From positions 124,001 through 188,000 of IMG/VR virus record IMGVR_UViG_3300028840_008160: a stretch of 64,000 nucleotides of DNA; one strand, given 5' to 3'. Position numbers and translations under genes: made by a program. The notes beneath the pieces were generated by a model. The model was not told the DNA's origin, did no database searches, and saw only the letters and a list, made by a program, of their open reading frames with translations. Shown here one piece after another: positions 15,658 through 63,677 of this stretch. Every line of letters starts with the position of its first letter. Position 1 is the first letter of the stretch.

Positions 15658-16947
15658 ATGATTGCTAGTTTGCAAGAACAAGCCAGACCATACAAATTGA
15701 TATTTACAGAAGATGCTGAAGAAATTAAAAAGTTGATGAACAAGACATATGATCGATTGAAAGAAACTGTTGAAGTTTCAGGATTTAGAAAAGGTCATGT
15801 GCCAAGGCAAGTTGCTGAAAAACAAAAATGGTTTAATAAATTTCAGATGTATCGACCCGTGTTTGATGAACTATATATTCGTGCAGTTAACGAATTAAAA
15901 ATAGATGTAGTTGATGCATTTGATTTTGAAGTTAAAGGCCCGTTTGAAGATACTTCACCAGTGACGATTCAAGCTACTGTATTTTTAATGCCTGTTGTAG
16001 AGTCATTTGACATTAATACTGTTAAAGTTCAAAAGAAAGTTACTAATGTAACAGAAGAAATGATTGATGATCAAATTAAGATTCATCTTGACAAATGTGC
16101 GACTTTTACAGCTGTTGATGATCCTGAGTATAAGATTAAAAACGGTGATGTGCTTATCATTGATTATGAAGGAAAAATAAATGGTAAGACATTTAAAGGT
16201 GGAACAGCAAAATTGTTTAAATACATTGTAGGGCAGACAAGATTTATTGAAGGTTTTGCTGAACAACTTTTGACATTTAAATCTGGTGAGTCTGGAGTTG
16301 TTAAAGTCAAATTTCCAGACAATTATTCGTCGACGGAATTACAAGGTAAAGATGCAGAGTTTAATGTGACTGTTCGCAAAGTTGATTCTAGAAGCAATGT
16401 AACGATTGAAGATCTTGCACGGCGTGATAATAAAACAGTACAACAATTTAGAGATGATATTAAAGCTAAACTCATAGTTGATCATGAAAGAATTAATGAA
16501 GAACAATTTAATAGTGATGTATTAGCTGCATGTGTGACAGCTGCTAGTATAGAACCTATTCCAACAAAGATGATTACATGGGAGATTGACAATGAGTGGC
16601 ATCAATTATTGTATCGTTTAAACATGACTGAAGAACAATATTTGAAAGATCGGCCAGAAAGTAAAACAGCATTTTATGCACAAAGACATATTAGAACAGA
16701 AAAAAAAGTACAAATAAAAGTTTTTCTAGATTACATTTGTGAACAACAAAAAATTACTGTTACTGAAGAAGAAGTTGCTGATTTTATTAAGGGTAGATCG
16801 GCAATGCTACAAAAATCTGATGAAGAACGTAAAGAAATATTTGAAAATTTGAAAAAGGAAGCAAATTATAAGGCTGCAGAATCAGCAGTGAAAAACGATA
16901 AGGCAACAGCATATCTTGTAGAATGTATTAGAGTAAAATTGCAATGA
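15658..16947 (+). CDS. tig: Trigger factor (ribosome-associated chaperone/PPIase)
   Basis: GFRKGHVP ribosome-binding signature, FKBP domain (IDYEG...FKGG...FIEGFAEQL...FPDNY), full three-domain length. Confidence 0.92.
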   Translation: MIASLQEQARPYKLIFTEDAEEIKKLMNKTYDRLKETVEVSGFRKGHVPRQVAEKQKWFNKFQMYRPVFDELYIRAVNELKIDVVDAFDFEVKGPFEDTSPVTIQATVFLMPVVESFDINTVKVQKKVTNVTEEMIDDQIKIHLDKCATFTAVDDPEYKIKNGDVLIIDYEGKINGKTFKGGTAKLFKYIVGQTRFIEGFAEQLLTFKSGESGVVKVKFPDNYSSTELQGKDAEFNVTVRKVDSRSNVTIEDLARRDNKTVQQFRDDIKAKLIVDHERINEEQFNSDVLAACVTAASIEPIPTKMITWEIDNEWHQLLYRLNMTEEQYLKDRPESKTAFYAQRHIRTEKKVQIKVFLDYICEQQKITVTEEEVADFIKGRSAMLQKSDEERKEIFENLKKEANYKAAESAVKNDKATAYLVECIRVKLQ

Positions 16948-21613: not shown

Positions 21614-21701
21614 TGACGAGTAGCCTAGCGGCAAGGCAGTTGGCTGTTAACCAACCGTGACGCAAGTCCAATCGGGGGTTCGAATCCCTCCTCGTCAGCC
21701 A
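21614..21701 (+). tRNA. tRNA-Asn(GTT) with long variable arm
   Basis: gttgg-ctGTTaa-ccaac; 18-nt variable region; CCA. Confidence 0.85.
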
Positions 21702-22911: not shown

Positions 22912-23598
22912 ATGTCAAATTATACTGGACAATTTGCTGGACAAGGTCATATCTGGAAGAGAGGAAAAACTGACATTGAATTATTTGGGCCAGAGAAAGC
23001 AAAATTAATTGGTAAAAAAATATCTAAAGCGTTAAAAGGTAAAAGTACTGGTATAGCTAAGAATGCTGACGCAGAACTGTTGCGACGAAAGCGTATTTCA
23101 GATGGCATGAAAAAAGCACATCGTGAAGGTCGTGCTAATAAATGGAAAAGAACAAATTCGTTTGCAGAACAAATGTTTGAAGCTTTTTTGATTAAGAAGA
23201 ATTATAAAAAAGGTGTTGATTTTGTACGAGAAAAAAGGTTTGGATTGTTTTCAGTTGATTTTTTCTTTCCAGAAAAAAATTTAGCAATCGAAATAGATGG
23301 ACAAGCACATTTTAGATATGAACATTTGAAACAACGTGATAAAGTAAAAGATAATTTTTTAAATAGTAAAGGCATAATTGTTTTACGAATTATTTGGAAA
23401 GTATTGTTTCATCATGCTAAAATTACATTTAATCAAATTGAAAAATTGATAATTCAAAATGATAGAATTGCAATTGAAAAATTTATGCTTGATCAATTTG
23501 ATAAATTGTTAATGATGAAAAATGATAAGCATAAATATACAAAAGTAATGAAAGACGGTGTAGCAGAGTTGGTTTCATGCTCTAGACTGCAAATCTAG
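22912..23598 (+). CDS. DUF559/Vsr-like endonuclease (homing-type)
   Basis: VDFF...LAIEIDG..H...RD..KD.FL..KG..VLRI; 3' end runs into tRNA-Cys. Confidence 0.75.
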   Translation: MSNYTGQFAGQGHIWKRGKTDIELFGPEKAKLIGKKISKALKGKSTGIAKNADAELLRRKRISDGMKKAHREGRANKWKRTNSFAEQMFEAFLIKKNYKKGVDFVREKRFGLFSVDFFFPEKNLAIEIDGQAHFRYEHLKQRDKVKDNFLNSKGIIVLRIIWKVLFHHAKITFNQIEKLIIQNDRIAIEKFMLDQFDKLLMMKNDKHKYTKVMKDGVAELVSCSRLQI

Positions 23599-23630
23599 GT
23601 ACGTGGGTTCAAATCCCACCACCGTCTCCA
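23554..23630 (+). tRNA. tRNA-Cys(GCA)
   Basis: ctaga-ctGCAaa-tctag; U73; CCA. Confidence 0.92.
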
Positions 23631-23636
23631 AAATAT

Positions 23637-23923
23637 AGTTGCTCTGGGCTTACGCGCTTAATGAAAGTTGGGTGAGGAAACTCGGGACACCACTGCTGAA
23701 GGTAGGAGATAGGCACCTTAAAAGACGGCTCAAACAATAATTAGTATGACTTTGATGGGTATGTCCAAGCCGAATGAAAGTCCATCAGCCTATCGTTTTT
23801 ACTACCGAGGGTGCAACTCCAAGCAGACCTAGAGGGTGAGCAGCTCGATGATGGTCGGGTCGGAGGCATTAGTCAGATGTAAGCCGCCCGAAAGGGTACA
23901 GAATCCCGGTTATAGGAGCAACT
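23637..23923 (+). ncRNA. rnpB: RNase P RNA (compact, divergent)
   Basis: GAGGAAACTCGGGAC (CR-I-like) and ACAGAATCCCGGTTA (CR-V-like) form P4; P1 AGTTGCTCT/GGAGCAACT. Confidence 0.8.
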
Positions 23924-23948
23924 TTTTCTTTTGAAGGAGTTTATAAAT

Positions 23949-24034
23949 GGGTGAGTAGCTCAGTTGGTCAGAGCGCCGGGCCGTTAACCCGGAGGCCCAT
24001 TGGGATTTCGTGGGTTCGAATCCCACCTTGCCCT
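23949..24034 (+). tRNA. tRNA-Asn(GTT)-like, C33 and long variable arm
   Basis: ccggg-ccGTTaa-cccgg; 17-nt variable region. Confidence 0.75.
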
Positions 24035-24066
24035 CTTTCTACGCAAATAGATATGATTACTATAAC

Positions 24067-26496
24067 ATGTTAGAGATTATAGGGAAACATTCAACTGCTA
24101 AAATAATGGTTGACGAAGTTGAAGATTCGTGCATGACACAAATCAAAAATTTCGTTGATCATCCTGCATTTACTAATCCAATCGCAATCATGCCAGATAC
24201 ACATGCCGGTATCGGATCTGTTATTGGGTTCACTATGAGGTTGACTAATAAAGTAATACCAAATGTTATTGGCGTTGACATTGGTTGTTTTATTAAGTCG
24301 ACAAAAGTTTCTTTAGCTGATGGTCGTGAGTTAACATTTGAACAATTGATCGAAGAACATGACAAAGGTTTGAGAAATTTTTGTTTTTCAAAAGATGACA
24401 AAGGCAATATTGTTATTGAAGAGATTTTTAGTCCTAGAAAAACAAGAACCGTGACTGAGTTAATTGAGATTACATTAGATAATGATGAAGTGATTACGTG
24501 TACTGTTGATCATATTTTTTATGATATTAATTGTCAAGAGGTTAAAGTTAGTGATATTAATAAAGGACAATCGCTTTATCCTTTATATATTGAAAAATCT
24601 GGAACAGTTCAAGATGAATTGTCAAAAATTAGTAAGAAGTTCAAATTACGCGATTATTTAGTCGTGTACAATCCCAAAACATATAAGTATGATTATATTC
24701 ATATTTTAGCTGATGATTATAATTTACGACATCATGTTTATGAAAAATCAAAATCAATTAGACATCACATTGATTTTGATAAACACAACAATAATCCGAC
24801 AAATATTACAAGAATGCAATGGAAAGATCATTTTGTTTTGCATTCAAAACATGCGAAGCAGCAAAATATTAAAGGGAAATCTGGTTGGTCAGCTGCTTGG
24901 AGAAAAAATAAAGATCGTTTTTCTGAGATGTCATCTAAAAAAATGAAAAAATTGCATGAAGATGCTTTGTTTAAAGAAAGATTGAAAATTAGAGCTAAAA
25001 CAAATAGAAAAAAATATCTAGAATCAGATGCTTTTTATGAAATGACTAGAGATGCAGGTAATAGAGGAAAAAAATATCTTGTTGCATATTCAAAATCAGA
25101 AAAAGGTAGGAACAAATCATCTGAGATTGGCAGGAATGTAGTAAATCAAAAATATCGTTGTTCTATTTGTAATAAGACAATAAAAAGTGCACGGGCATGC
25201 CCTAATCATTTTAACAGAAAAGATCATAAGCAATGTAATTTGAATATGTCTGATATGATATTGTTAAAAAATCACACAGTAAAAAGTATAAAGCGAATTA
25301 GTTGCGAGCCAACAGATGTGTATTGTTTTACGACTAGATTTAGTAATTTTGCATTAGCATCAGGTGTGTTCGTTCATAATTGTGGCATGTTGTCTATTAA
25401 CATTGGTAAAACTTTGCCGATATCGTTAGAGGATTTTGATACAAAAATTCGTCAGAGAATTCCGTTTGGGCAAGAAGTGCATGATGAAGCAGTTATTCGT
25501 ATGGATACGGACTTTCCATGGAAAATTGCAATAAGTAAAGCTGAAGCATTTGCTGCAGCGTTTCGCGAATCTTATAGAGATATCAGTGTTCCAAGATATT
25601 GTATGGACTGGTTTCTTGAAAAATGTGATACTATTGGTGGTGGAGCAAGACGAGTAATTAATTCATTAGGAACACTTGGCGGAGGAAATCATTTTATCGA
25701 AACTGGTGTTTCAACAACAGGTGGTGATTACTGGATTACTATACATTCTGGGTCAAGGAATTTTGGATTAAAAGTTTGTAATTACTGGCAAAGTATTGCA
25801 GCTAAGTCTTTCAAAAAAGAAAGAACTGGAAAGATTCAAGAGCAAATAGAAGAAGCAAAACGTACTCTTGAAGGAAAAGAGTTGTACGATAGAATTAAAG
25901 AAATTAAACGGTCAACATCAACAAGAGGTATTGACATAACACATCTTGAATGGTTGGAAAATGAAGTCGCTGATGGTTATTTATTTGATATGATATTTGC
26001 TCAATTGTATGCTAGTGTTAATAGATCATATATGGCTAAGTTGATTTGTGATGTACTTGGAGTAGAAATACAAGATTCGATTGAGTCTATTCATAACTTT
26101 ATAGATTTTAATGACTTCATCATTAGAAAAGGTGCTATTAGTTCGTATATTGGTGAACCAATGATTATACCATTTAATATGCGTGATGGTATACTTATTT
26201 GTGAAGGAAAATCGAACAAAGAATGGAATTATTCTGCGCCTCATGGTGCAGGCAGATTGATGAGCAGAACTCAAGCAAATAAACGAATTGATTTAGACAC
26301 ATTTAAGAGTCAAATGAACGGGATTTTTTCTACATCAGTGTGCAAGTCGACATTGGATGAAGCACCGGATGCTTATAAGAGTTCTACAATGATAGAGCAG
26401 GCTATTGAACCAACAGCTGCGATTTTAAACAGGATAAAACCAATTCATAATATGAAAGATTCAAGTGAGTTTCAATTTAGAAGAAAGAAGCAATAA
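24067..26496 (+). CDS. rtcB: RtcB RNA ligase containing an intein
   Basis: MPDTHAG, GVDIG|CG, GTLGGGNHF, HSGSR, HGAGR, DEAP.AYK; ATG 24067. Confidence 0.93.
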   Translation: MLEIIGKHSTAKIMVDEVEDSCMTQIKNFVDHPAFTNPIAIMPDTHAGIGSVIGFTMRLTNKVIPNVIGVDIGCFIKSTKVSLADGRELTFEQLIEEHDKGLRNFCFSKDDKGNIVIEEIFSPRKTRTVTELIEITLDNDEVITCTVDHIFYDINCQEVKVSDINKGQSLYPLYIEKSGTVQDELSKISKKFKLRDYLVVYNPKTYKYDYIHILADDYNLRHHVYEKSKSIRHHIDFDKHNNNPTNITRMQWKDHFVLHSKHAKQQNIKGKSGWSAAWRKNKDRFSEMSSKKMKKLHEDALFKERLKIRAKTNRKKYLESDAFYEMTRDAGNRGKKYLVAYSKSEKGRNKSSEIGRNVVNQKYRCSICNKTIKSARACPNHFNRKDHKQCNLNMSDMILLKNHTVKSIKRISCEPTDVYCFTTRFSNFALASGVFVHNCGMLSINIGKTLPISLEDFDTKIRQRIPFGQEVHDEAVIRMDTDFPWKIAISKAEAFAAAFRESYRDISVPRYCMDWFLEKCDTIGGGARRVINSLGTLGGGNHFIETGVSTTGGDYWITIHSGSRNFGLKVCNYWQSIAAKSFKKERTGKIQEQIEEAKRTLEGKELYDRIKEIKRSTSTRGIDITHLEWLENEVADGYLFDMIFAQLYASVNRSYMAKLICDVLGVEIQDSIESIHNFIDFNDFIIRKGAISSYIGEPMIIPFNMRDGILICEGKSNKEWNYSAPHGAGRLMSRTQANKRIDLDTFKSQMNGIFSTSVCKSTLDEAPDAYKSSTMIEQAIEPTAAILNRIKPIHNMKDSSEFQFRRKKQ
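24286..25380 (+). mobile_element. Intein with HNH endonuclease domain in RtcB
   Basis: Starts CFIKSTKV, ends GVFVHN before Cys+1; internal HHIDFDKHNNNPTNI. Confidence 0.9.
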
Positions 26497-27177: not shown

Positions 27178-27449
27178 ACTGTGTAATCTGCGAACGCGAG
27201 GTACCGGGTGAACGGTTTCTTGAAAAGCATCATTTGATTCCAAAATGTGGCAAGGGAAAAGACACTGTAAAAGTATGTGTTGATTGCGGTGATCAGATTC
27301 ATGTATTATTTACTGAAAAGGAACTACGAGACATATACAATACAGTTGAAAAGTTGAAATCAAATGAGCGAATGCAGAAGTGGATTAGATGGATTCAAAA
27401 AAGACCAACATTTGGTACTGTTTGTATGAAAAGAAAAAAGCGCCTATAG
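27174..27449 (+). CDS. Small HNH-family protein
   Basis: CVIC, HHLIPK, CVDC. Confidence 0.7.
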   Translation: MNCVICEREVPGERFLEKHHLIPKCGKGKDTVKVCVDCGDQIHVLFTEKELRDIYNTVEKLKSNERMQKWIRWIQKRPTFGTVCMKRKKRL

Positions 27450-27511
27450 TTCAGTGGTAGAACAACGGTCCCTAAAACCGTGTGTCGTGGGTTCAAATCC
27501 CTCTGGGCGCA
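27440..27511 (+). tRNA. Amber-suppressor-like tRNA (CTA)
   Basis: acggt-ccCTAaa-accgt; cloverleaf with one T-stem mismatch. Confidence 0.7.
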
Positions 27512-34799: not shown

Positions 34800-34885
34800 T
34801 TTAAGGAGGAATGAAATGAGAGTTAAGCTATGTCCTACACAAGTTTTTGATGGCCGAATATGCATGACAAATCAATGTTATGTAT

Positions 34886-34958
34886 AGGGGCATAGCTCAG
34901 GGGTTAGAGCGACGGCCTTAAGCCGTGTCTGTCGTGGGTTCAATTCCCACTGCCCTCA
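34886..34958 (+). tRNA. tRNA-like RNA with 5-nt anticodon loop (CTTAA)
   Basis: Normal D and T arms; acggc-cttaa-gccgt. Confidence 0.6.
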
Positions 34959-35008
34959 TTGTGAAAACTATGAAATCAATAGCATACAATTCTCTAAAAG
35001 GAGATTGT

Positions 35009-36732: not shown

Positions 36733-36845
36733 TTTAGACTTAAATGATCTCATTTGATATAATTTGGAGGTGCAGAATGTTTAACAAACGGTACAAACGA
36801 AAACGAAAGACATTCTGCCCGTAGTCGTGATGGCTACGGGCTTAT

Positions 36846-36927
36846 GGGCTCGTGGCCAAGTGGTAGCCGAAAGGCGAAGGCAACGGACTTAATCCGTGGA
36901 TCGGGGGTTCGAATCCCTCCGGGCCCA
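36846..36927 (+). tRNA. tRNA-like RNA with 5-nt anticodon loop (CTTAA) and D-loop hairpin insert
   Basis: acgga-cttaa-tccgt; GCC-GAAA-GGC inserted in D loop. Confidence 0.6.
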
Positions 36928-36948
36928 TTAACTTTGGAAAGATTCATA

Positions 36949-37395
36949 ATGGATAAACCGATATTAGGCTTTTTTGGTGAGTACAGGTTCCTTTCAAATT
37001 TTCATTTATGCGAGATTGTTTACAAAGGAATAACATTTCCTAGTACTGAACACGCGTTTCAAGCTGATAAGGCTACAAATGAAGAATTAAGACAATATAT
37101 TGCTGATCTACCTACATGTAGAGCAGCGAAAAAGGCAGGCGGAACAATTGACCTTCGTGCTCATTGGGAAACTGATAAGATTCAAGTAATGATCGACATT
37201 ACTAGAATAAAATATCAGATACCAGAACTTAAAGAAAAATTACTTGCTACTGGGCAAGCATATTTAGAAGAAACAAACACATGGAATGATAAATTTTGGG
37301 GTGTTTGTAATGGTGTTGGACAAAATCAACTCGGTAAGACATTAATGCAAGTGCGATATGAATTAAGATGGATTGGTCAAGACAAATATACTTGA
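36949..37395 (+). CDS. NADAR-family (YbiA-like) protein
   Basis: FLSNF, STEHAFQA.K, LLATG, D.FWG, G.NQLGK.LM.VR. Confidence 0.9.
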   Translation: MDKPILGFFGEYRFLSNFHLCEIVYKGITFPSTEHAFQADKATNEELRQYIADLPTCRAAKKAGGTIDLRAHWETDKIQVMIDITRIKYQIPELKEKLLATGQAYLEETNTWNDKFWGVCNGVGQNQLGKTLMQVRYELRWIGQDKYT

Positions 37396-38279: not shown

Positions 38280-38651
38280 TTGTATGATTTAAAAGGAGAT
38301 GATAGATTGAGAGTTTTAGTGTTAGATGATTCAAAGATTAGATTAATTCAATTCAGACAGAATTTGATTGGTCACAATGTCAGGTGTGTTACAACTGTTA
38401 GAGAGACGATTGATTCTTTGGCAGATGAAGACTGGGATTATTTGTTTTTGGATCATGATCTTGGTGGTCAAGTTAATGTACCATCGGGTCCAGGTACAGG
38501 ATATGAAGTCGCTCAATGGCTAGTTGAACATCCTGATAGACAACCTGAACACATTGTTCTTCATAGTTTTAATGAAAATGGACGAAAGAACATGCAATCA
38601 TTGCTTCCTGAAGCTATGATGTGTCCTGGTGCATGGACAAAAATAAGGTAG
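38280..38651 (+). CDS. Cyclic-phosphate-processing receiver-domain protein
   Basis: VLDD, LFLDHDLG, GYEVA.WL, VLHS.N..G. Confidence 0.75.
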   Translation: MYDLKGDDRLRVLVLDDSKIRLIQFRQNLIGHNVRCVTTVRETIDSLADEDWDYLFLDHDLGGQVNVPSGPGTGYEVAQWLVEHPDRQPEHIVLHSFNENGRKNMQSLLPEAMMCPGAWTKIR

Positions 38652-49511: not shown

Positions 49512-50903
49512 ATGTCAATGGAAAAACTCTACGAATCGCTTCACAGACGTTTACGTCCCGAAGATGTCGCAGAACTTATTTTAAAAGTTTTGCACCCTAA
49601 TCTGACACGTTCTGAACGTGATGAGCTTAATAAAATCGCTAAGCATTCATTAAAGCGCGGAATGTATTCGTTTACTTCAATGGCTCAAGATTTTCATTGT
49701 GCTATTGCACCTGATCGCCAAGTAAAGAAAGCAAAGGAGTTGTTTGAAACTGCATATAAAATTGATTGTACTGACCCTGAAGCAGTACTTGCGTTGATTC
49801 GTACTATTTCCAAAGAGATAGAGAAAACTGTCGGTAAAGGTGATTTCAAAGACGACAGAATGAATCGCGAAGCACGTAAATCACATGGACTTGACATTTC
49901 TCGTCGTCGGTATAACAAATTGTTCAGATTTCTTGGCAGATTTGAACAAAAAGTTGAGAAGTATGTGTTTGAAATGCGCAAAGAACGTGCTACACGCGTT
50001 TCAAAATCGGGTCTTGCGTTTAAAGTTTCCGAGAAAGATTTTATGAAGTCAAAAGAAGCAGCATGCTTTGTTGCTTATTTTACTGCAAGAAAGAATCGCA
50101 GAAGTGTATTTACTAATTCATCGCAAGATCGTGCATATGATAATTTGTCAAAACTTTTATTGAACAAATTTAAATCAAATCCTTGTCGAGCAGGTTGGCG
50201 AATTATAGCTAGAGTGATGCCTGATGCTGAAATTGTTGCAAAATTAACAAAGAAAGACAAGATGGAATTGTTTGCGACATGGATTGATGTTCTTAATGAC
50301 ATTGCTGATATGCTTAAGACTGTGTGGTTGGGTAGCCGGTTCAATCGAGAAACTATGGTTGTTTCTCGCGGTGATGATTCAAGCACATGGAATTCTTTGG
50401 CTGGCGCATGGAACACTGCACGTCAAGGATGGTTCAGTCTTGTTTATGCTCTTGGCATGGATAAGATGCTTGAAACTGTTTGTTTTGGTAAGGTTATGAG
50501 ATTGATGGCTGCTGATGTTGTTCGTTGGCATCAGTCAAGTGGTGGTCAACTTGAGCCTGATACTTTGGTATGGGCCACATTACCAGCTCCATGGGAAGTC
50601 TTTTCGGGCGAAAAAGAATGTTCAAAGCAAATAGTTGAAGGTGTTTGCAAAAAGAATAATGTTGATCCTGTTCGAAAGAATTGGATAATGCCAATTAAGT
50701 CAAGATCAGCTGTTGAATTTAAACCGACGCCTGAACTTGTTCATGGTGTAACAGTGTCGCATCCAGGGTTGGCTAATATTCTTAAGAAAGCTGGATGGTT
50801 TTCTGGAAAGCAAGCTGTTCCAGTTTCAGAAGCAGTTGTAGTTGATCATGATGAACATGGAGCAGTTGTAGGAGCAAACTTTGCAAATGCGTCGTCGATA
50901 TAG
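49512..50903 (+). CDS. Basic helical protein of unknown function
   Basis: SD AGAGG; promoter-like motif at 49472; stop codon lies inside the following tRNA-like gene. Confidence 0.75.
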   Translation: MSMEKLYESLHRRLRPEDVAELILKVLHPNLTRSERDELNKIAKHSLKRGMYSFTSMAQDFHCAIAPDRQVKKAKELFETAYKIDCTDPEAVLALIRTISKEIEKTVGKGDFKDDRMNREARKSHGLDISRRRYNKLFRFLGRFEQKVEKYVFEMRKERATRVSKSGLAFKVSEKDFMKSKEAACFVAYFTARKNRRSVFTNSSQDRAYDNLSKLLLNKFKSNPCRAGWRIIARVMPDAEIVAKLTKKDKMELFATWIDVLNDIADMLKTVWLGSRFNRETMVVSRGDDSSTWNSLAGAWNTARQGWFSLVYALGMDKMLETVCFGKVMRLMAADVVRWHQSSGGQLEPDTLVWATLPAPWEVFSGEKECSKQIVEGVCKKNNVDPVRKNWIMPIKSRSAVEFKPTPELVHGVTVSHPGLANILKKAGWFSGKQAVPVSEAVVVDHDEHGAVVGANFANASSI

Positions 50904-50966
50904 CTCAGTGGTAGAGCGCACGGCTCTTGGACCGTGTGGACGCTGGTTCGAGCCCAGCTGTCGACG
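50894..50966 (+). tRNA. tRNA-like RNA with 8-nt anticodon loop (CTCTTGGA)
   Basis: cacgg-ctcttgga-ccgtg; normal D and T arms. Confidence 0.6.
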
Positions 50967-50975
50967 CTATACTAT

Positions 50976-52559: not shown

Positions 52560-53171
52560 ATGTATTTAATTGTTGATTTTGAAGCTACGTGTTGGAAGAA
52601 AGACACTCCTGAAGGGCGTCGTAAAACTAATCGTAATGAAAATGAAATCATTGAGATTGGTGCTGCGATTGTCAATGATAGTTTTCAGATGATATCATCT
52701 TTAGGTTTGTTTGTTAAGCCGATATTGAATCCTGTGTTGTCAGATTTTTGTAAACAACTTACTACAATAACGCAAGAAGATATTGATAATGCTGAACCAT
52801 TGTCAAAAGCATGGATTAAATTTGAAAATGATGTAAGACTTATCACAGATAAAATGTTATCAGAGTTCGTGTTTTGTTCGTGGGGTCATTATGATAGACG
52901 ACAACTAAAGCGTGATTTAGATAGACACGGATTACAGTTTCCATTTACATATCATGTTAGTCTGAAACACGATTTTTTAGATCGAACAGGAAAAAGGTTT
53001 GGCGTTGGTCAAGCTTTACAGTATTTTGGATTGCAATTTGAAGGGACACAGCATAGAGGTGTTGATGATGCAAAAAATATTGCAAGAATTTTTGCTATAG
53101 AATGGAAATCAACAGGTTTTATATTAAGAGATGATCATAAATGCGCGACACAAGATATGTTGAAAAGCTGA
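52560..53171 (+). CDS. DEDDh 3'-5' exonuclease (ERI-1/KapD-like)
   Basis: VDFEATC, EIIEIG, WG.YD, HRG.DDA. Confidence 0.9.
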   Translation: MYLIVDFEATCWKKDTPEGRRKTNRNENEIIEIGAAIVNDSFQMISSLGLFVKPILNPVLSDFCKQLTTITQEDIDNAEPLSKAWIKFENDVRLITDKMLSEFVFCSWGHYDRRQLKRDLDRHGLQFPFTYHVSLKHDFLDRTGKRFGVGQALQYFGLQFEGTQHRGVDDAKNIARIFAIEWKSTGFILRDDHKCATQDMLKS

Positions 53172-53232: not shown

Positions 53233-53873
53233 GGGGGTGTACTGGTTATCGACGTGTGGTGTGAACTATGAGTTGCATGTCGAGGATAGTCGTTGGCCTC
53301 GTTAATCATCGGCTAAAACCATAACTGCCAAAGCTAATAACTTTGCGGTTGCTTTCGCTCGTCAGTTCGCTGACAATGTACGCTTCGGCGTCATGGCGGG
53401 AGCGCTCCAAGCTGCCTAATTAAAGGCAGCAAAGAAACAGGACGACGCCGCTGATTCTGTTTCTCAGCTAGCGGCTGGATTCTTAAGTGGGTTCGGCTTA
53501 AGAGTTAAGAAATACAGACCGATTCGTGGGGAATAGTTGGTCATCTACCTACCCGGCGTCTTATTAAAAGTTGACTAAACATGTAGTAACTTGTACGGAT
53601 TGTCACACGGACAGGGGTTCGATTAATTTGGTCGCTTTAGTTGGTAACAACTATTGAAAAGTGGGTGAATTCAAGGAACTCTAAATCAAGTAATTGACAT
53701 GACAACCTTGAGCCAAGTCGGTTGAAGAGCAAATGTAAACCGAAAGGTGCAGAGACTAAGAGGTGAGAAGCTCAATCAATAATCCTCTATTAGCGCCCAT
53801 CATCCAATACCATGGATGAAGAAATAGTCCACACCATCATGAAAATGATGGATTATGTGTCCCCTCACCTCCA
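53233..53873 (+). ncRNA. ssrA: tmRNA interrupted by group I intron
   Basis: GGGGGTG/CACCTCC-A acceptor with G3.U70; tag frame 53327-53419 ending ALQAA. Confidence 0.92.
53624..53859 (+). mobile_element. Group I intron in tmRNA T-loop (no ORF)
   Basis: GAATTCAAGGAA, ACCTTGAGCCAAG, GCAGAGACTA, AATAGTCC, terminal G; removal restores AGGGG-TTCGATT-CCCCT. Confidence 0.88.
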
Positions 53874-53990
53874 TTAATTGATAAGCCGTTATTGAGATCG
53901 AAACACTTAATAACGGCTTTCTTTTGTTGTTCAAATGTAGTGCATAAACACAATATTAAGAGTTCGAGACCGAACACTTCGAGAATTATT

Positions 53991-54914
53991 ATGGACATTA
54001 AAAAACTTCAAGAACAAATCAACAATGTTTACATTGGCGCTTTTGGATCAACGCCGTTACGCCAAAGATTAGAAGACATTCATGGCGAAGCAGATGAACT
54101 TTGTAGATTTACTGATTTACGTAATCTTCGAGAAGAAGCTGGTGATTTGTTAAGTTCATTAATACAGCTTTGTAATGAAGCTAATTGGGATGTTTCAGAA
54201 CTCATTAATGAAAATTTAGAAAAAATCAAAAAACGTTTGCAACAATATCATGGACTAGGTCGAAAGAAAACTATTGCTTTATTTGGTGGCGCATTCGATC
54301 CAATTACAATTGGTCATATAGAAGTTGCTAAACTAGTACTAGATACTAGTAAAACATTTGATGAAGTATGGTTCATGCCATGTTACCAGCATATGTATAA
54401 CAAAGAAATGGCAGCCGCTAAACATCGCTTGCAGATGTGTAATTTAGCGATAGAAGATGCTAGAATGAAAGTATTTGATTTCGAAATTAAACACAAGTTA
54501 GCGGGCGAAACATATCATACTGTAAAACAATTGCTAGGAACAGATTTTGCAAAGCACACATATGATTTCAGTATGATAATTGGAATGGATAACGCTAATA
54601 CATTTCACCAATGGGTTAATTTCGAAGATCTTGAAAGAATGCTTAGATTTGTTGTAGTTCCTCGAAAAGGAGAGACGAGGGATGAATCTGTAGATTGGTA
54701 TTTACATAGACCCCATATATACCTATCTCCTGATAATAGTATACCTCAGATATCTTCTAGTAAGATCAGAGAATGGTTACAGACATTCTATATCAACGCA
54801 TTACATGGTGGACGACAGGACGAATATCATCATGTCGTTGATTTACTAGAGAAGAATCTATCACTTAAAGTATTTGATTATATACGAAGTTGCGAACTAT
54901 ATGTCAAATCTTGA
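53991..54914 (+). CDS. MazG-like domain fused to NadD-type nucleotide adenylyltransferase
   Basis: EADEL...REEAGDLL; FGGAFDPITIGH, IIGMD, ISSSKIR. Confidence 0.82.
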   Translation: MDIKKLQEQINNVYIGAFGSTPLRQRLEDIHGEADELCRFTDLRNLREEAGDLLSSLIQLCNEANWDVSELINENLEKIKKRLQQYHGLGRKKTIALFGGAFDPITIGHIEVAKLVLDTSKTFDEVWFMPCYQHMYNKEMAAAKHRLQMCNLAIEDARMKVFDFEIKHKLAGETYHTVKQLLGTDFAKHTYDFSMIIGMDNANTFHQWVNFEDLERMLRFVVVPRKGETRDESVDWYLHRPHIYLSPDNSIPQISSSKIREWLQTFYINALHGGRQDEYHHVVDLLEKNLSLKVFDYIRSCELYVKS

Positions 54915-57050: not shown

Positions 57051-57761
57051 ATGGATTATTTATCTGATGAACAACTGATAAACGATTATAGAATTCAACA
57101 AACAGCAGCTCAAAAGACGAGGGTCTTTAAGCTGCTTTTGTCGCGCAGAAGGCAAGAAAAAAGTTCTTGGCAAATGGTTATTCGCAAATATGTATCGTGG
57201 CGCTTGTCAAGATCGAAAAACAGTTTCGATGTATATGATAAAGATGATTTGTATCAAAGATGTTTGTGTTGTTTTTACAAAGCTGTGTCAGATAAGTTCG
57301 ATCTTGCAAGAGGTGTTAAATTTTCAACTTATATGTATACGGCTTTGGAGAAGACAGTCAATCGAGTAATAGTTGAACTTAGAAAGAAAAAAAGAACGAT
57401 AGAGATTGATGGGAGAAGAATTAGTCCTCAACGTTTTACAGATAGTTTGCAAAAACCTATTGGGGAAGATACTAAAACTACACTTAGCGACATTGTTGCT
57501 GAACCAAATAACGACATTACTGATGATGAACGAATGTTAGCAGAATTGATTATTAAGAAATGTCAACATTATTTGACACCGATGCAATTTGAAATATTTA
57601 TCAATGGTGATATTAGAGGTATTATATCTGGTAAAGAGTTGGCTATAAAATATGGCAAATCAGAGCCTACAATATCAGCAATTAAAAAACGAAAAATTAC
57701 TAAAGCTCTTCGACGAGTTCGGGCTGAGTTGGTTGAGGAGTTTAACTTAGTGACTTCGTAA
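57051..57761 (+). CDS. Sigma70-family RNA polymerase sigma factor
   Basis: DDLYQ...KAV..KFDLARGVKFSTY (region 2), SLQKPI, C-terminal HTH. Confidence 0.8.
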   Translation: MDYLSDEQLINDYRIQQTAAQKTRVFKLLLSRRRQEKSSWQMVIRKYVSWRLSRSKNSFDVYDKDDLYQRCLCCFYKAVSDKFDLARGVKFSTYMYTALEKTVNRVIVELRKKKRTIEIDGRRISPQRFTDSLQKPIGEDTKTTLSDIVAEPNNDITDDERMLAELIIKKCQHYLTPMQFEIFINGDIRGIISGKELAIKYGKSEPTISAIKKRKITKALRRVRAELVEEFNLVTS

Positions 57762-57802: not shown

Positions 57803-58312
57803 ATGGACTATAAATGGTATGCATTATTTGTTATGCAGGGAAAAGAATTTTACGTTAAAGACAAGTTAGAACTTATTTGTACTGAACTTGATAACATTGA
57901 CCGCGTATTATTACCCACCATAAAAGAAATTTCTGAAGTTCGTCGCAAAAAAATAGTTCGAAACATTCCTGTTTATCCTAGTTATCTTTTTATTCATGCT
58001 TATCTTGGTCGCGGTTTACAAACAATTATTTCTGAAGTTAATTATGTTGTGCGACTTTTAGGTCGGACTAAACCATTTGCGATTCCAGATAAGGAAATGG
58101 ACATTGTTCAAGCAATTGCTTCGGATAACAAAATTCATAGTGCGTTTTCATATAAGATTGGTGATGTTGTTGAAATTTTAGGCGGTCATTGTAAAGGTTT
58201 ATCTGGTCGTGTAATTGATATTATTGATACAAATAATCTCAAATTAGAGATTCAAATATTCAATAGAGCAATTTATACGACTATAAAGTTAGAAGATGCA
58301 AAAGCAGGTTAA
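57803..58312 (+). CDS. nusG: NusG/RfaH-family transcription factor
   Basis: WYALFV..GKE, YPSYLF (NGN); GDVVEILGG..KG (KOW). Confidence 0.88.
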   Translation: MDYKWYALFVMQGKEFYVKDKLELICTELDNIDRVLLPTIKEISEVRRKKIVRNIPVYPSYLFIHAYLGRGLQTIISEVNYVVRLLGRTKPFAIPDKEMDIVQAIASDNKIHSAFSYKIGDVVEILGGHCKGLSGRVIDIIDTNNLKLEIQIFNRAIYTTIKLEDAKAG

Positions 58313-63131: not shown

Positions 63132-63320
63132 AACAATGATTTAAACACTGCGAACTTTACGACATACATGTATATAAGCATTTCACAACATAACAGTACT
63201 AATGTAATACGAGACCAACTTTTTTTGTAAATTTAAGCTTGCTACAAGTATATAATGACAAAGTAGACAATGGAAATAACTTATCAGTTTAACCGGCCTT
63301 AACCAAAATAGGAGGTGTTT

Positions 63321-63677
63321 ATGGCCACTCGCAGAAAGACAAAAGATCAGCAGTTTAGAATGCCTGATCTGATCACTGTCGTTCAGGAAGTTACAAGCCT
63401 TTCTCGCCGTGAATCAAAGGTGGCAATTCAAGCTGTTATTTATGCCATCAAGAAGGGTCTGGTGGAAAAAGGTTATGTGAAGATTCCTGGTTTTGGTAAG
63501 TTTGTCAAGGTTCACAAGGATGCAACTGAACGTAAGTCATTTGGTAAGATGACAAAAATTCCTGCAAAGGATGTCGTGAAGTTCCGTCCGTTGAAGAACC
63601 TCAAGCTGCTCACCAATGGACAGATTGAACTTGAAGTTTATGATGATGAGGAAGAAGAAGCAGACGACGAAGAATAA
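63321..63677 (+). CDS. HU/IHF-family DNA-binding protein with acidic tail
   Basis: VKIPGFGKF, IPAK.VVKFRP. Confidence 0.88.
   Translation: MATRRKTKDQQFRMPDLITVVQEVTSLSRRESKVAIQAVIYAIKKGLVEKGYVKIPGFGKFVKVHKDATERKSFGKMTKIPAKDVVKFRPLKNLKLLTNGQIELEVYDDEEEEADDEE

What the first reader, a model, noticed from the sequence alone, without database searches (positions are those of the whole stretch)
23637..23923. Phage-encoded compact RNase P RNA within the tRNA array
About 287 nt with P1 and a P4 helix of non-consensus but mutually compensated sequence (CGGGA/TCCCG). It is short for a bacterial RNase P RNA, so the specificity domain may be reduced. It would let the phage mature its own polycistronic tRNAs.
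Basis: partly seen in the sequence, partly recalled or inferred. Interest (0 to 1): 0.6.

Follow-up and report, generated by a model that had tools for sequence, protein, structure and literature searches.

The report
Phage-encoded minimal RNase P RNA
A 287-base gene among the 56 tRNA genes of a huge phage is a stripped-down copy of RNase P RNA, the RNA enzyme that trims tRNA precursors, and it belongs to a family of such mini-ribozyme genes in phage and mobile-element tRNA arrays for which I found no published description.

Summary
Window 23637-23923 (+) is a real homologue of bacterial RNase P RNA. Rfam RNaseP_bact_a aligns end to end (55.2 bits, E 3e-16), but below its gathering score of 100, so routine annotation misses it. 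The whole catalytic domain is present: P1-P6, P15-P17, the bulged U of P4, GCAA, the GGU that binds tRNA 3'-CCA, and CR-I, CR-IV and CR-V. Almost all of the specificity domain and P18 are gone.

I found 23 further non-identical relatives of 194-266 nt in viral contigs, metagenomes and genome assemblies. Every helix is kept through compensatory changes. Most relatives lie in tRNA arrays, and in 15 of 24 a tRNA starts within 30 nt of the RNA's 3' end.

The best reading is a phage-borne catalytic subunit that removes 5' leaders from the phage's own tRNA transcripts, probably with the host RnpA protein. Activity, expression and the protein partner are inferred, not shown. No rnpA lies in the window and no RNA-seq run holds this stretch.

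Eight literature searches found no report of a virus-encoded RNase P RNA. I rate it a new variant of a known kind.

The parts
23554..23630 (+). Upstream tRNA-Cys(GCA) with encoded 3'-CCA. It ends 6 nt before P1.
   Evidence: ARAGORN; Rfam tRNA 64.8 bits; CCA check
23637..23923 (+). Whole compact RNase P RNA, from the 5' strand of P1 to the 3' strand of P1 (287 nt; 49.5% G+C in a 35.5% G+C window).
   Evidence: Rfam RF00010 55.2 bits, E 3.3e-16; P1 search; nhmmer family profile 161.6 bits; G+C
23637..23645 (+). P1 5' strand; pairs with 23915-23923.
   Evidence: P1 differs in all 24 relatives and still pairs
23647..23654 (+). P2 5' strand (GGCUUACG); pairs with 23878-23885.
   Evidence: 18 distinct P2 helices at the same place in 24 relatives
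23655..23674 (+). P3 hairpin, rich in G-U pairs, with a GAAA loop at 23663-23666.
23674..23686 (+). CR-I: GAGGAAA plus the P4 5' strand AAC[U]CGGG, with the bulged U at 23682.
   Evidence: invariant columns
23688..23691 (+). P5 5' strand CACC; pairs with GGUG at 23810-23813.
   Evidence: seven P5 variants, all 24 paired in a fixed register
23693..23697 (+). P6 pseudoknot 5' strand CUGCU in J5/7; pairs with AGCAG at 23839-23843 in the P17 loop.
   Evidence: covarying versions UUGCU/AGCAA, UCGCU/AGCGA, CCGCU/AGCGG, UUAACG/CGUUAA, AGAUAA/UUGUCU, AGAAGAAA/UUUCUUCU
23701..23806 (+). Vestigial specificity domain. It has a 5-bp stem (GGUAG 23701-23705 with CUACC 23802-23806) around a small conserved module (GA ... 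GUUUUUA). That module carries a variable hairpin at 23708-23794, which is only GAU-GAAA-GUC in the closest relative, L150.
   Evidence: no similarity to real S-domains (z at most 2.1)
23813..23816 (+). J5/15 GCAA. G, C and the last A are invariant in all 24 relatives; the middle A is nearly invariant.
23817..23865 (+). The P15-P16-P17 arm: P15 CUCC 23817-23820 with GGAG 23862-23865; P16 GACC 23826-23829 with GGUC 23853-23856; P17 GAG 23832-23834 with CUC 23844-23846; and the invariant GGU at 23858-23860, the L15 motif that binds tRNA 3'-CCA.
23866..23878 (+). J15/2 (CR-IV; equivalent to J18/2 of RNAs that have P18), GCAUUAGUCAGAU. P18 is absent here.
23886..23897 (+). Small hairpin CCC-GAAA-GGG in J2/4. 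Among the 24 relatives only L254 has an insert at this position.
23898..23912 (+). CR-V: ACAGAA plus the P4 3' strand CCCGGUU (23905-23911).
23949..24035 (+). Downstream tRNA (anticodon GUU, long variable arm), 25 nt after P1. Cleavage at its 5' end would also release the 3' side of the RNase P RNA.

Best explanation
This is a phage-borne gene for the catalytic RNA subunit of RNase P. It descends from the bacterial type A RNA and keeps the complete catalytic (C) domain, but has lost nearly all of the specificity (S) domain and P18.

Proposed mechanism. Steps 1 to 4 are inferred.
1. The RNA is transcribed as part of the tRNA array. No terminator-like site lies between it and its neighbours.
2. 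It is freed by ordinary tRNA end-processing. In particular, RNase P cleavage at the 5' end of the tRNA 25 nt downstream releases its 3' side.
3. It folds into the P1-P6/P15-P17 core, probably with the host's RnpA protein bound, since no rnpA gene lies in the window.
4. It cleaves the 5' leaders of the phage's closely packed pre-tRNAs, and probably of its tmRNA. Substrates are held by pairing of their encoded 3'-CCA with the conserved GGU of L15, not by the T-loop check that the missing S-domain would provide.

Shown here: homology, an intact core, selection on the structure, and the recurrent tRNA-array context.
For: Homology: Rfam RF00010 gives a global alignment at 55.2 bits, E 3.3e-16.

Core nucleotides: all nucleotides that established RNase P biochemistry treats as essential are present and are invariant or nearly so in 24 relatives. 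These are GAGGAAA, the bulged U of P4, GCAA in J5/15, GGU in L15, the AG and AU of J15/2, and CAGAA..CC.G.UUA.

Structure under selection:
- RNAalifold on 24 sequences predicts 36 pairs, 26 of them with compensatory double changes. No P4 pair is broken in any sequence, and two P4 pairs each occur as GC, CG, AU or UG (19 of 29 pairs on the first 11 sequences).
- P4 has six compensated variants and P5 has seven. The P6 pseudoknot covaries, and P1 differs in all 24 sequences.
- The RNA core is 53% G+C in a 35.5% G+C genome.

Context:
- The window has 56 tRNAs plus a tmRNA on the same strand, and many tRNAs are 0-10 nt apart.
- 32 of 56 tRNA genes encode CCA, and N-1 is U in 27 of 56.
- Relatives sit in tRNA arrays on the same strand. 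In 15 of 24 a tRNA starts within 30 nt (-1 to 29 nt) after P1.
- 24 of 46 RNase P-like loci found by pattern scans of IMG/VR lie within tRNA arrays.
- Neighbouring genes serve RNA repair and maturation: RtcB, cREC_REC and a DEDDh exonuclease.

Precedent: the E. coli C-domain alone is catalytic, depends on a P6-like pairing and does not need P18 (PMC5839562). Natural type T RNAs lack the S-domain (PMC3579882).
Against: - No activity or expression data exist. No public RNA run holds the stretch.
- No RnpA (Pfam PF00825) appears among the 60 window ORFs scanned (59 of the 72 of at least 90 aa, all but one on the + strand), and no RNR motif appears in any frame. However, only 64 of the contig's 329.8 kb could be read.
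- The score is below Rfam's curated threshold.
- Loss of the S-domain lowers efficiency in engineered RNAs (PMC5839562).
- P3 is rich in G-U pairs.
- The single-sequence folding energy is no better than shuffles (z -0.27; insert z -0.76).
- Viral origin rests on the IMG/VR label and on replication-type PHROG hits. No virion gene lies in the window.
Confidence: 0.77

Rival explanations
1. It is a decaying relic: a host rnpB fragment captured together with tRNA genes, now non-functional and losing domains.
For: It has lost about 140 model positions (the S-domain) and P18, and it scores below the Rfam threshold. One relative, L247, looks interrupted or broken.
Against: The catalytic nucleotides are invariant across 24 relatives whose G+C ranges from 31 to 69%. 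Every helix is kept by compensatory changes. The same domain boundary is shared by all members, which points to one selected architecture and not to random decay.
Confidence: 0.06
2. It works as a decoy or sponge that binds host RnpA (or pre-tRNA) to re-route or shut down host tRNA maturation, without needing to be a catalyst itself.
For: The regions that contact the protein in bacterial holoenzymes (P2/P3, P15, J15/2, J2/4) are kept. No phage rnpA was found.
Against: A decoy would not need the bulged U, the ACAGAA/GAGGAAA core, the P6 pseudoknot and the GGU motif to stay invariant. Embedding it in the phage's own tRNA array argues for processing and not for inhibition.
Confidence: 0.05
3. It is an RNase P-derived ribozyme with a changed job. 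It might act only in cis on the tRNA fused to its 3' end, or on other substrates (tmRNA precursor, phage or host mRNAs), and not as a general trans-acting tRNA 5' maturase.
For: 15 of 24 members have a tRNA within 30 nt of their 3' end, which resembles engineered self-cleaving RNase P-tRNA conjugates (my own recollection, not checked here). Loss of the S-domain removes T-loop recognition. A tmRNA gene is present.
Against: 9 of 24 members lack an adjacent downstream tRNA. The CCA-binding GGU is kept and most tRNAs encode CCA, which suits general trans cleavage. C-domain-only RNAs do cleave in trans (PMC5839562).
Confidence: 0.08
4. The contig is cellular or a megaplasmid and not a phage, and this is simply that organism's own unusual RNase P RNA, as in CPR bacteria.
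For: CPR bacteria have reduced RNase P RNAs (PMC8172020). L256 from a Shapirobacteria MAG is 206 nt. No virion gene lies in the window.
Against: The contig is an IMG/VR viral genome of 329.8 kb. In 30 kb the window holds 56 tRNAs interleaved with HNH/DUF559 endonuclease genes, plus an intein and a group I intron. It also has phage-type primase, helicase, exonuclease and a phage metallopeptidase. It has no rRNA or ribosomal-protein genes. Relatives occur in tRNA arrays of genomes that must already have their own RNase P, for example Achromobacter anxifer.
Confidence: 0.04

Closest known systems
Bacterial type A RNase P RNA (Rfam RF00010; E. coli M1 RNA)
   Same: It has the same C-domain architecture and conserved sequence blocks: P1-P6, P15-P17, CR-I, CR-IV, CR-V, the bulged U in P4 and the GGU CCA-binding loop. 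The Rfam alignment is global and significant.
   Different: It lacks P8-P14 with CR-II/CR-III (about 140 model positions) and P18. P4 has two swapped base pairs. It scores 55 bits against a threshold of 100. It is encoded by a virus inside a tRNA array, not as a solitary cellular gene.
[quoted passage not shown]
   Same: It is a natural RNase P RNA that keeps the catalytic domain and has lost most of the specificity domain. It is likewise missed by the standard Rfam models.
   Different: Type T is archaeal, with a 3-bp P2, a shortened P15 and archaeal protein partners. This RNA has a 7-8 bp P2 and a bacterial P15-P17 arm with GGU and P6, and its best Rfam match is bacterial type A. The resemblance is convergent reduction, not membership.
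Diverged RNase P RNAs of Candidate Phyla Radiation bacteria (PMC8172020)
   Same: These are bacterial RNAs lacking P12-P14 and P18, found only by lowering covariance-model thresholds. L256 (206 nt) turned up in my own genome scan.
   Different: Those are the single cellular copy, are not in tRNA arrays, and some lack the GGU motif. The same paper reports that only tRNAs and a tmRNA were detected by Rfam in megaphages.
Engineered C-domain-only E. coli RNase P RNA (Eco CP RPR; PMC5839562)
   Same: It is an S-domain-less bacterial RNA that still cleaves in trans. Its activity depends on a P6-like pairing and does not need P18. That is the same combination this natural family keeps (P6) and drops (P18).
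   Different: It is a laboratory construct with reduced efficiency. Here the architecture is natural, conserved and retains a short stem with a small conserved module in place of the S-domain.
Theta (HDV-like) ribozymes next to phage tRNAs (PMC10879173)
   Same: It is a phage-encoded ribozyme placed beside phage tRNA genes and implicated in tRNA maturation.
   Different: Theta ribozymes are small and self-cleaving, and are unrelated in fold. This one is a trans-acting RNase P homologue that would act at tRNA 5' ends.

Membership tests
Bacterial RNase P RNA, type A (Rfam RF00010) | Covariance-model score at or above the curated gathering score (100 bits) | tested here: not met
   55.2 bits, E 3.3e-16; absent from the gathering-level scan
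Bacterial RNase P RNA, type A (Rfam RF00010) | P4 formed by CR-I (GAGGAAAGUCCGG) and CR-V (ACAGAACCCGGCUUA), with a bulged U | tested here: met
   23674-23686 and 23898-23912. Two pairs are swapped but complementary, and the bulged U at 23682 is kept.
Bacterial RNase P RNA, type A (Rfam RF00010) | P1-P2-P3 framework and P5 with J5/15 GCAA | tested here: met
   G, C and the last A of GCAA are invariant in 24 relatives
Bacterial RNase P RNA, type A (Rfam RF00010) | P15-P16-P17 arm with the GGU CCA-binding loop, and the P6 pseudoknot | tested here: met
   23817-23865, with GGU at 23858-23860. P6 is 23693-23697 with 23839-23843, and it covaries.
Bacterial RNase P RNA, type A (Rfam RF00010) | Specificity domain (P7-P14) with CR-II and CR-III | tested here: not met
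   140 model positions (15+15+110) are replaced by unaligned sequence. Only a 5-bp stem plus a small module and a variable hairpin remain. There is no similarity to real S-domains.
Bacterial RNase P RNA, type A (Rfam RF00010) | P18 helix | tested here: not met
   P18 is deleted in the Rfam alignment. Only L035 and L241 of the family have a hairpin there. By my own knowledge P18 is also absent in some accepted type A RNAs.
Bacterial RNase P RNA, type A (Rfam RF00010) | Endonucleolytic removal of pre-tRNA 5' leaders, stimulated by RnpA | not testable with these tools
   This needs an in vitro assay or complementation. No rnpA is in the window.
[quoted passage not shown] | 3-bp P2, shortened P15, 2-nt P5/P15 linker, archaeal C-domain (PMC3579882) | tested here: not met
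   P2 is 7-8 bp, the P5/P15 linker is CAA (3 nt), and the best clan match is bacterial type A.
Compact tRNA-array RNase P RNA family (defined here) | 194-287 nt; full C-domain with P6 and GGU; S-domain replaced by a short stem around GGAG-[hairpin]-(C)GUUUGUA-like module; usually no P18; located in or at the head of a tRNA array | tested here: met
   The window matches all of these. nhmmer family profile 161.6 bits (the window is one of the 11 sequences the profile was built from); alignments A1/A2; context.

The most novel reading that the evidence does not exclude
tRNA arrays of huge phages, and of related mobile elements in bacterial genomes, carry their own class of RNase P ribozyme. It is a bacterial-type, S-domain-less 'mini-P' RNA of about 195-290 nt that standard models miss. 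It matures itself by cleaving the tRNA fused to its 3' end. It also gives the element a tRNA 5'-processing activity that does not depend on the host's RNase P RNA, either using the host RnpA protein or working without any protein. This would be the first virus-encoded RNase P and a natural bacterial counterpart of the archaeal type T RNA.
Probability: 0.5. Interest if true: 0.85.

Novelty: new variant of a known kind. Interest (0 to 1): 0.72.

Why it matters
RNase P is treated as a universal cellular housekeeping ribozyme. A virus-borne copy would add 5' tRNA processing to the list of translation functions that huge phages bring with them, alongside tRNAs, tmRNA, synthetases and ribosomal proteins.

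The family is also a natural experiment in how little of a bacterial RNase P RNA is needed. It keeps the C-domain, P6 and the CCA-binding loop. It drops the S-domain and P18. Deletion studies singled out the same P6-like pairing as needed and P18 as dispensable.

All members score below Rfam's thresholds, so they are invisible in current phage and MAG annotation. A dedicated model would probably uncover many more. One member lies in a cultured bacterium (Achromobacter anxifer LMG 26857), which makes the question testable at the bench.

Tried and rejected
- **Rfam at gathering thresholds** gave no RNase P hit. Only the permissive scan showed it.
- **Single-sequence folding** is no better than shuffles (z -0.27; insert z -0.76), so energy alone says nothing here.
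- **blastn against 50,697 GenBank phage records** found no match for the window RNA or for L261. A type A phage-contig RNA matched three records, but the two regions inspected carry bacterial housekeeping genes and look like cellular DNA. No cultured-phage example was found. blastn is insensitive for this RNA.
These were filtered out by requiring both P4 strands.
- **A full-length covariance model** could not be built, because calibration was forecast at 9 min. For the same reason count of structure pairs was not run. I did not type a long dot-bracket string. I used RNAalifold counts and my own scripts. The per-sequence shuffle controls are weak for 3-5 bp helices. The argument rests on fixed-register pairs and on covariation.
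- **Expression:** no RNA run holds the stretch, only DNA contigs from sediment and seawater metagenomes.
- **RnpA:** no Pfam hit in the 60 ORFs scanned and no RNR motif in six frames of the window and all loci. The motif test is crude, and 266 kb of the contig are out of reach.
- **S-domain remnant:** I asked whether the 87-nt hairpin (23708-23794) is a remnant of the S-domain. It shows no significant similarity to 13 fuller RNase P RNAs.
- **Promoter and terminator scan** was uninformative: 35 promoter-like sites against 24.6 +/- 5.3 expected, and no terminator between the RNA and its neighbours.
- **DEDDh exonuclease (52560-53171):** it is KapD-like, below cut-off, and not a specific RNase T equivalog. 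I do not claim it trims tRNAs.

Full report
**Observation**

Rfam's bacterial type A RNase P model aligns over its whole length (model 1-367) to 23636-23928 at 55.2 bits, with E 3.3e-16 in a 601-nt permissive scan. The 5' strand AAC[U]CGGG (23679-23686) pairs with CCCGGUU (23905-23911). Against the consensus AAG[U]CCGG/CCGGCUU, two pairs have been exchanged on both strands.

**Anatomy**

From 5' to 3' the elements are:
- P1 5' strand, 23637-23645.
- P2 5' strand, 23647-23654.
- P3 hairpin with a GAAA loop, 23655-23674.
- CR-I (GAGGAAA) and the P4 5' strand with its bulged U, 23674-23686.
- P5 5' strand, 23688-23691.
- J5/7, carrying the 5' strand of the P6 pseudoknot, 23693-23697.
- A 5-bp stem, 23701-23705 with 23802-23806, enclosing a small module and a hairpin (23708-23794).
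- P5 3' strand and the GCAA linker, 23810-23816.
- P15, 23817-23820 with 23862-23865.
- P16, 23826-23829 with 23853-23856.
- P17, 23832-23834 with 23844-23846. Its loop supplies the P6 3' strand (23839-23843).
- The GGU of L15, 23858-23860.
- J15/2 (CR-IV), 23866-23878.
- P2 3' strand, 23878-23885.
- A small CCC-GAAA-GGG hairpin, 23886-23897.
- CR-V with the P4 3' strand, 23898-23912.
- P1 3' strand, 23915-23923.

In the Rfam alignment about 140 model positions are replaced by unaligned sequence, and P18 is deleted. Those positions are the specificity domain, P7-P14 with CR-II and CR-III. The hairpin at 23708-23794 shows no significant similarity to the S-domains of 13 fuller RNase P RNAs (z at most 2.1). 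It is not notably stable (z -0.76). In the closest relative it is just GAU-GAAA-GUC. It is therefore a variable expansion and not a remnant of the S-domain.

**Relatives**

Pattern scans of IMG/VR, JGI metagenomes and GTDB genomes were filtered for both P4 strands. A family profile search followed. Together these gave 23 further non-identical RNAs of the same compact build:
- They are 194-266 nt long, with 31-69% G+C.
- Where scanned against Rfam, nine members score 39-83 bits, below the gathering scores of 100 (type A) and 84 (archaeal). Two of them fit the archaeal model best. L160, a duplicate of member L128, gave no RNase P hit at E 0.001 or better.
- L001 is the window's own contig, IMGVR_UViG_3300028840_008160, 329.8 kb.

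Across the 24 sequences, the nucleotides that RNase P biochemistry treats as the catalytic and substrate-binding core are invariant or nearly so. They are GAGGAAA, the bulged U, GCAA, GGU, the AG and AU of J15/2, and CAGAA..CC.G.UUA.

The helices change sequence but stay paired:
- RNAalifold predicts 36 pairs, 26 of them with compensatory double changes. No P4 pair is broken in any sequence, and two P4 pairs each occur as GC, CG, AU or UG. On the first 11 sequences the count was 19 of 29.
- In registers fixed by invariant anchors, P4 has six fully complementary variants and P5 has seven.
- P1 is different in all 24 sequences, and P2 has 18 versions.
- The P6 pseudoknot covaries: CUGCU/AGCAG, UUGCU/AGCAA, UCGCU/AGCGA, CCGCU/AGCGG, UUAACG/CGUUAA, AGAUAA/UUGUCU and AGAAGAAA/UUUCUUCU.

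This is the signature of an RNA under selection for the RNase P catalytic fold.

**Context**

The window carries 56 tRNA genes and a tmRNA gene, all on the + strand. Many tRNAs are only 0-10 nt apart. 32 of the 56 encode 3'-CCA, the partner of the conserved GGU. N-1 is U in 27 of 56, against a T frequency of 30%. The RNA core is 53% G+C in a 35.5% G+C window.

Between the tRNAs lie several kinds of gene:
- HNH and DUF559 endonuclease genes.
- An intein-bearing RtcB ligase directly downstream, a cREC_REC domain protein, a NADAR protein and a DEDDh exonuclease.
- Farther out, a phage-type primase, helicases, an exonuclease, a phage metallopeptidase, trigger factor, NusG, a sigma factor and HU.

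The association with tRNA arrays is general. Most relatives lie in arrays on the same strand. In 15 of 24 a tRNA begins within 30 nt (-1 to 29 nt) after P1, often with the RNase P RNA as the first gene of the array. Of 46 RNase P-like loci that the pattern scans recovered from IMG/VR, 24 have at least two same-strand tRNAs within 1 kb. These include full-size type A RNAs that pass the Rfam threshold, such as L042 at 224 bits. The hits in genome assemblies are in tRNA arrays too. One is a 32-tRNA array in the cultured Achromobacter anxifer LMG 26857.

**How it most likely works**

Shown: homology to RNase P RNA, an intact and conserved catalytic core, selection on the structure, and placement among densely packed tRNA genes.

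Inferred:
- The RNA is co-transcribed with the array. No terminator-like site separates it from its neighbours.
- It is released by tRNA end-processing. Its 3' side is cut free when RNase P cleaves the 5' end of the next tRNA.
- It then removes 5' leaders from the phage's pre-tRNAs and probably its tmRNA. It anchors substrates through CCA-GGU pairing and not through the T-loop contacts of the lost S-domain.

Two published results make this plausible. The E. coli C-domain alone cleaves in trans, needs a P6-like pairing and does not need P18 (PMC5839562). Thermoproteaceae use a natural S-domain-less RNA (PMC3579882). This family keeps P6 and drops P18, in line with what those deletion studies found.

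The protein partner is unknown. None of the 60 window ORFs scanned (59 of the 72 of at least 90 aa, all but one on the + strand) hits the RnpA family, and no RNR motif occurs. The simplest assumption is therefore use of the host's RnpA. However, 266 kb of the contig could not be read.

**Rivals**

- *Decaying relic.* This does not fit invariant catalytic nucleotides and compensated helices across relatives spanning 31-69% G+C.
- *Pure RnpA decoy.* A decoy would not need the bulged U, P6 or GGU.
- *Changed job* (cis-only self-release, or other substrates). This is not excluded. It is favoured somewhat by the frequent RNA-tRNA tandem. It is disfavoured by the 9 of 24 members without one and by the retained CCA-binding loop.
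- *Cellular origin of the contig.* This is unlikely given the IMG/VR classification, the mobile-element load and the absence of rRNA or ribosomal-protein genes. No virion gene lies in the window, so this point rests partly on the database label.

**Comparison with what is known**

It works like a bacterial type A RNase P RNA reduced to its C-domain. As a member of RF00010 it fails two tests run here, the curated score and the presence of an S-domain. It meets the P1-P6, P15-P17, CR-I, CR-IV, CR-V and GGU features. It is not an archaeal type T RNA, because its P2, P5/P15 linker and P15-P17 arm are bacterial. It resembles the reduced RNAs of CPR bacteria, but those are single cellular genes outside tRNA arrays (PMC8172020). 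Theta ribozymes are the nearest functional precedent for a phage ribozyme that serves tRNA maturation, but they are unrelated in fold (PMC10879173).

**Novelty**

Eight full-text searches found no paper describing a virus- or phage-encoded RNase P RNA. The huge-phage survey does not mention RNase P (PMC7162821). A paper that scanned megaphages with Rfam reports only tRNAs and a tmRNA (PMC8172020), which is what sub-threshold scores would produce. The library lacks most subscription journals, so a prior report cannot be excluded. I rate it a new variant of a known kind.

**Limits**

- There is no activity, expression or protein-partner evidence. No RNA run holds the stretch.
- A full-length covariance model could not be calibrated. 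The covariation counts therefore come from MAFFT/RNAalifold alignments and my own anchor-based scripts, not from a phylogenetically controlled test.
- The pattern scans required near-exact P4 motifs, so the family's true size and its cellular distribution are unknown.

Noticed in passing
window 53233-53875: The phage tmRNA gene (Rfam 102.7 bits) is interrupted in its T-loop by a group I intron (Rfam Intron_gpI 53610-53851, 94.1 bits). The 3' exon (TCCCCTCACCTCCA, about 53861-53874) completes the T-stem and acceptor stem.
   Followed up: partly
window 24010-26496: The RtcB RNA ligase gene directly downstream of the RNase P RNA carries an intein (Pfam Intein_splicing, residues 100-457).
   Followed up: partly
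window 27440-27511, 34885-34959, 50894-50967: There are suppressor-type tRNAs with anticodons CUA and UUA, and a tRNA with an 8-nt anticodon loop (cttg). This hints at stop-codon reassignment or frameshift suppression in this phage.
   Followed up: no
window 21614-21701 and 23949-24035: Two 87-88-nt tRNAs with anticodon GUU and a long variable arm, which is unusual for tRNA-Asn. One is the RNase P RNA's downstream neighbour.
   Followed up: no
window 52560-53171; 38280-38651; 36844-37395: Three genes sit inside or at the end of the tRNA array: a DEDDh 3'-5' exonuclease (Pfam RNase_T, KapD-like, below the NCBIfam cut-off), a cREC_REC cyclic-phosphate-processing domain protein, and a NADAR protein. 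With RtcB they suggest an RNA repair and maturation toolkit.
   Followed up: partly
window 15658-16947, 57051-57761, 57803-58312, 63315-63677, 53892-54914: The phage encodes homologues of trigger factor, a sigma-70-type factor, NusG, HU and a MazG-NMNAT fusion.
   Followed up: no
L247 (IMGVR_UViG_3300005965_000002, 258.6 kb), minus strand, from about position 4518 of the reverse complement: The 5' half of a family-type RNase P RNA runs straight into a tRNA-Lys(UUU) and an HNH endonuclease ORF. The 3' half is not within the 1.1 kb held downstream. The gene may be split, interrupted or decayed.
   Followed up: partly
L261 6076-6299 (Achromobacter anxifer LMG 26857, NZ_CAHLAR010000005.1): A cultured bacterium carries a 224-nt family member (Rfam 82.7 bits) inside an array of 32 tRNA genes in 8 kb. 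This is presumably a prophage or island, and a possible experimental system.
   Followed up: partly
L250-L255, L258-L260, L263 (mostly Gemmataceae and other Planctomycetes MAGs; also one Opitutaceae and one Alcaligenaceae MAG): A subgroup of the compact family has yet another compensated P4 (AAG[U]CAGG/CCUGCUU). In most of these it sits at the head of, or directly before, tRNA genes.
   Followed up: partly
L264 (MW495066.1 112316-118471) and L265 (CAKLQF020000022.1): GenBank 'phage' records (Microcystis phage MaAM05, Acinetobacter phage MD-2021a) match a type A RNase P RNA in unannotated spacers flanked by bacterial housekeeping genes (fabI, engB, mtgA; coaD). These look like cellular DNA within phage records.
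   Followed up: partly
window 36863-36920: A partial tRNA match (Rfam model positions 7-64, 37.9 bits) overlaps the start of the NADAR ORF. It may be a tRNA fragment.
   Followed up: no
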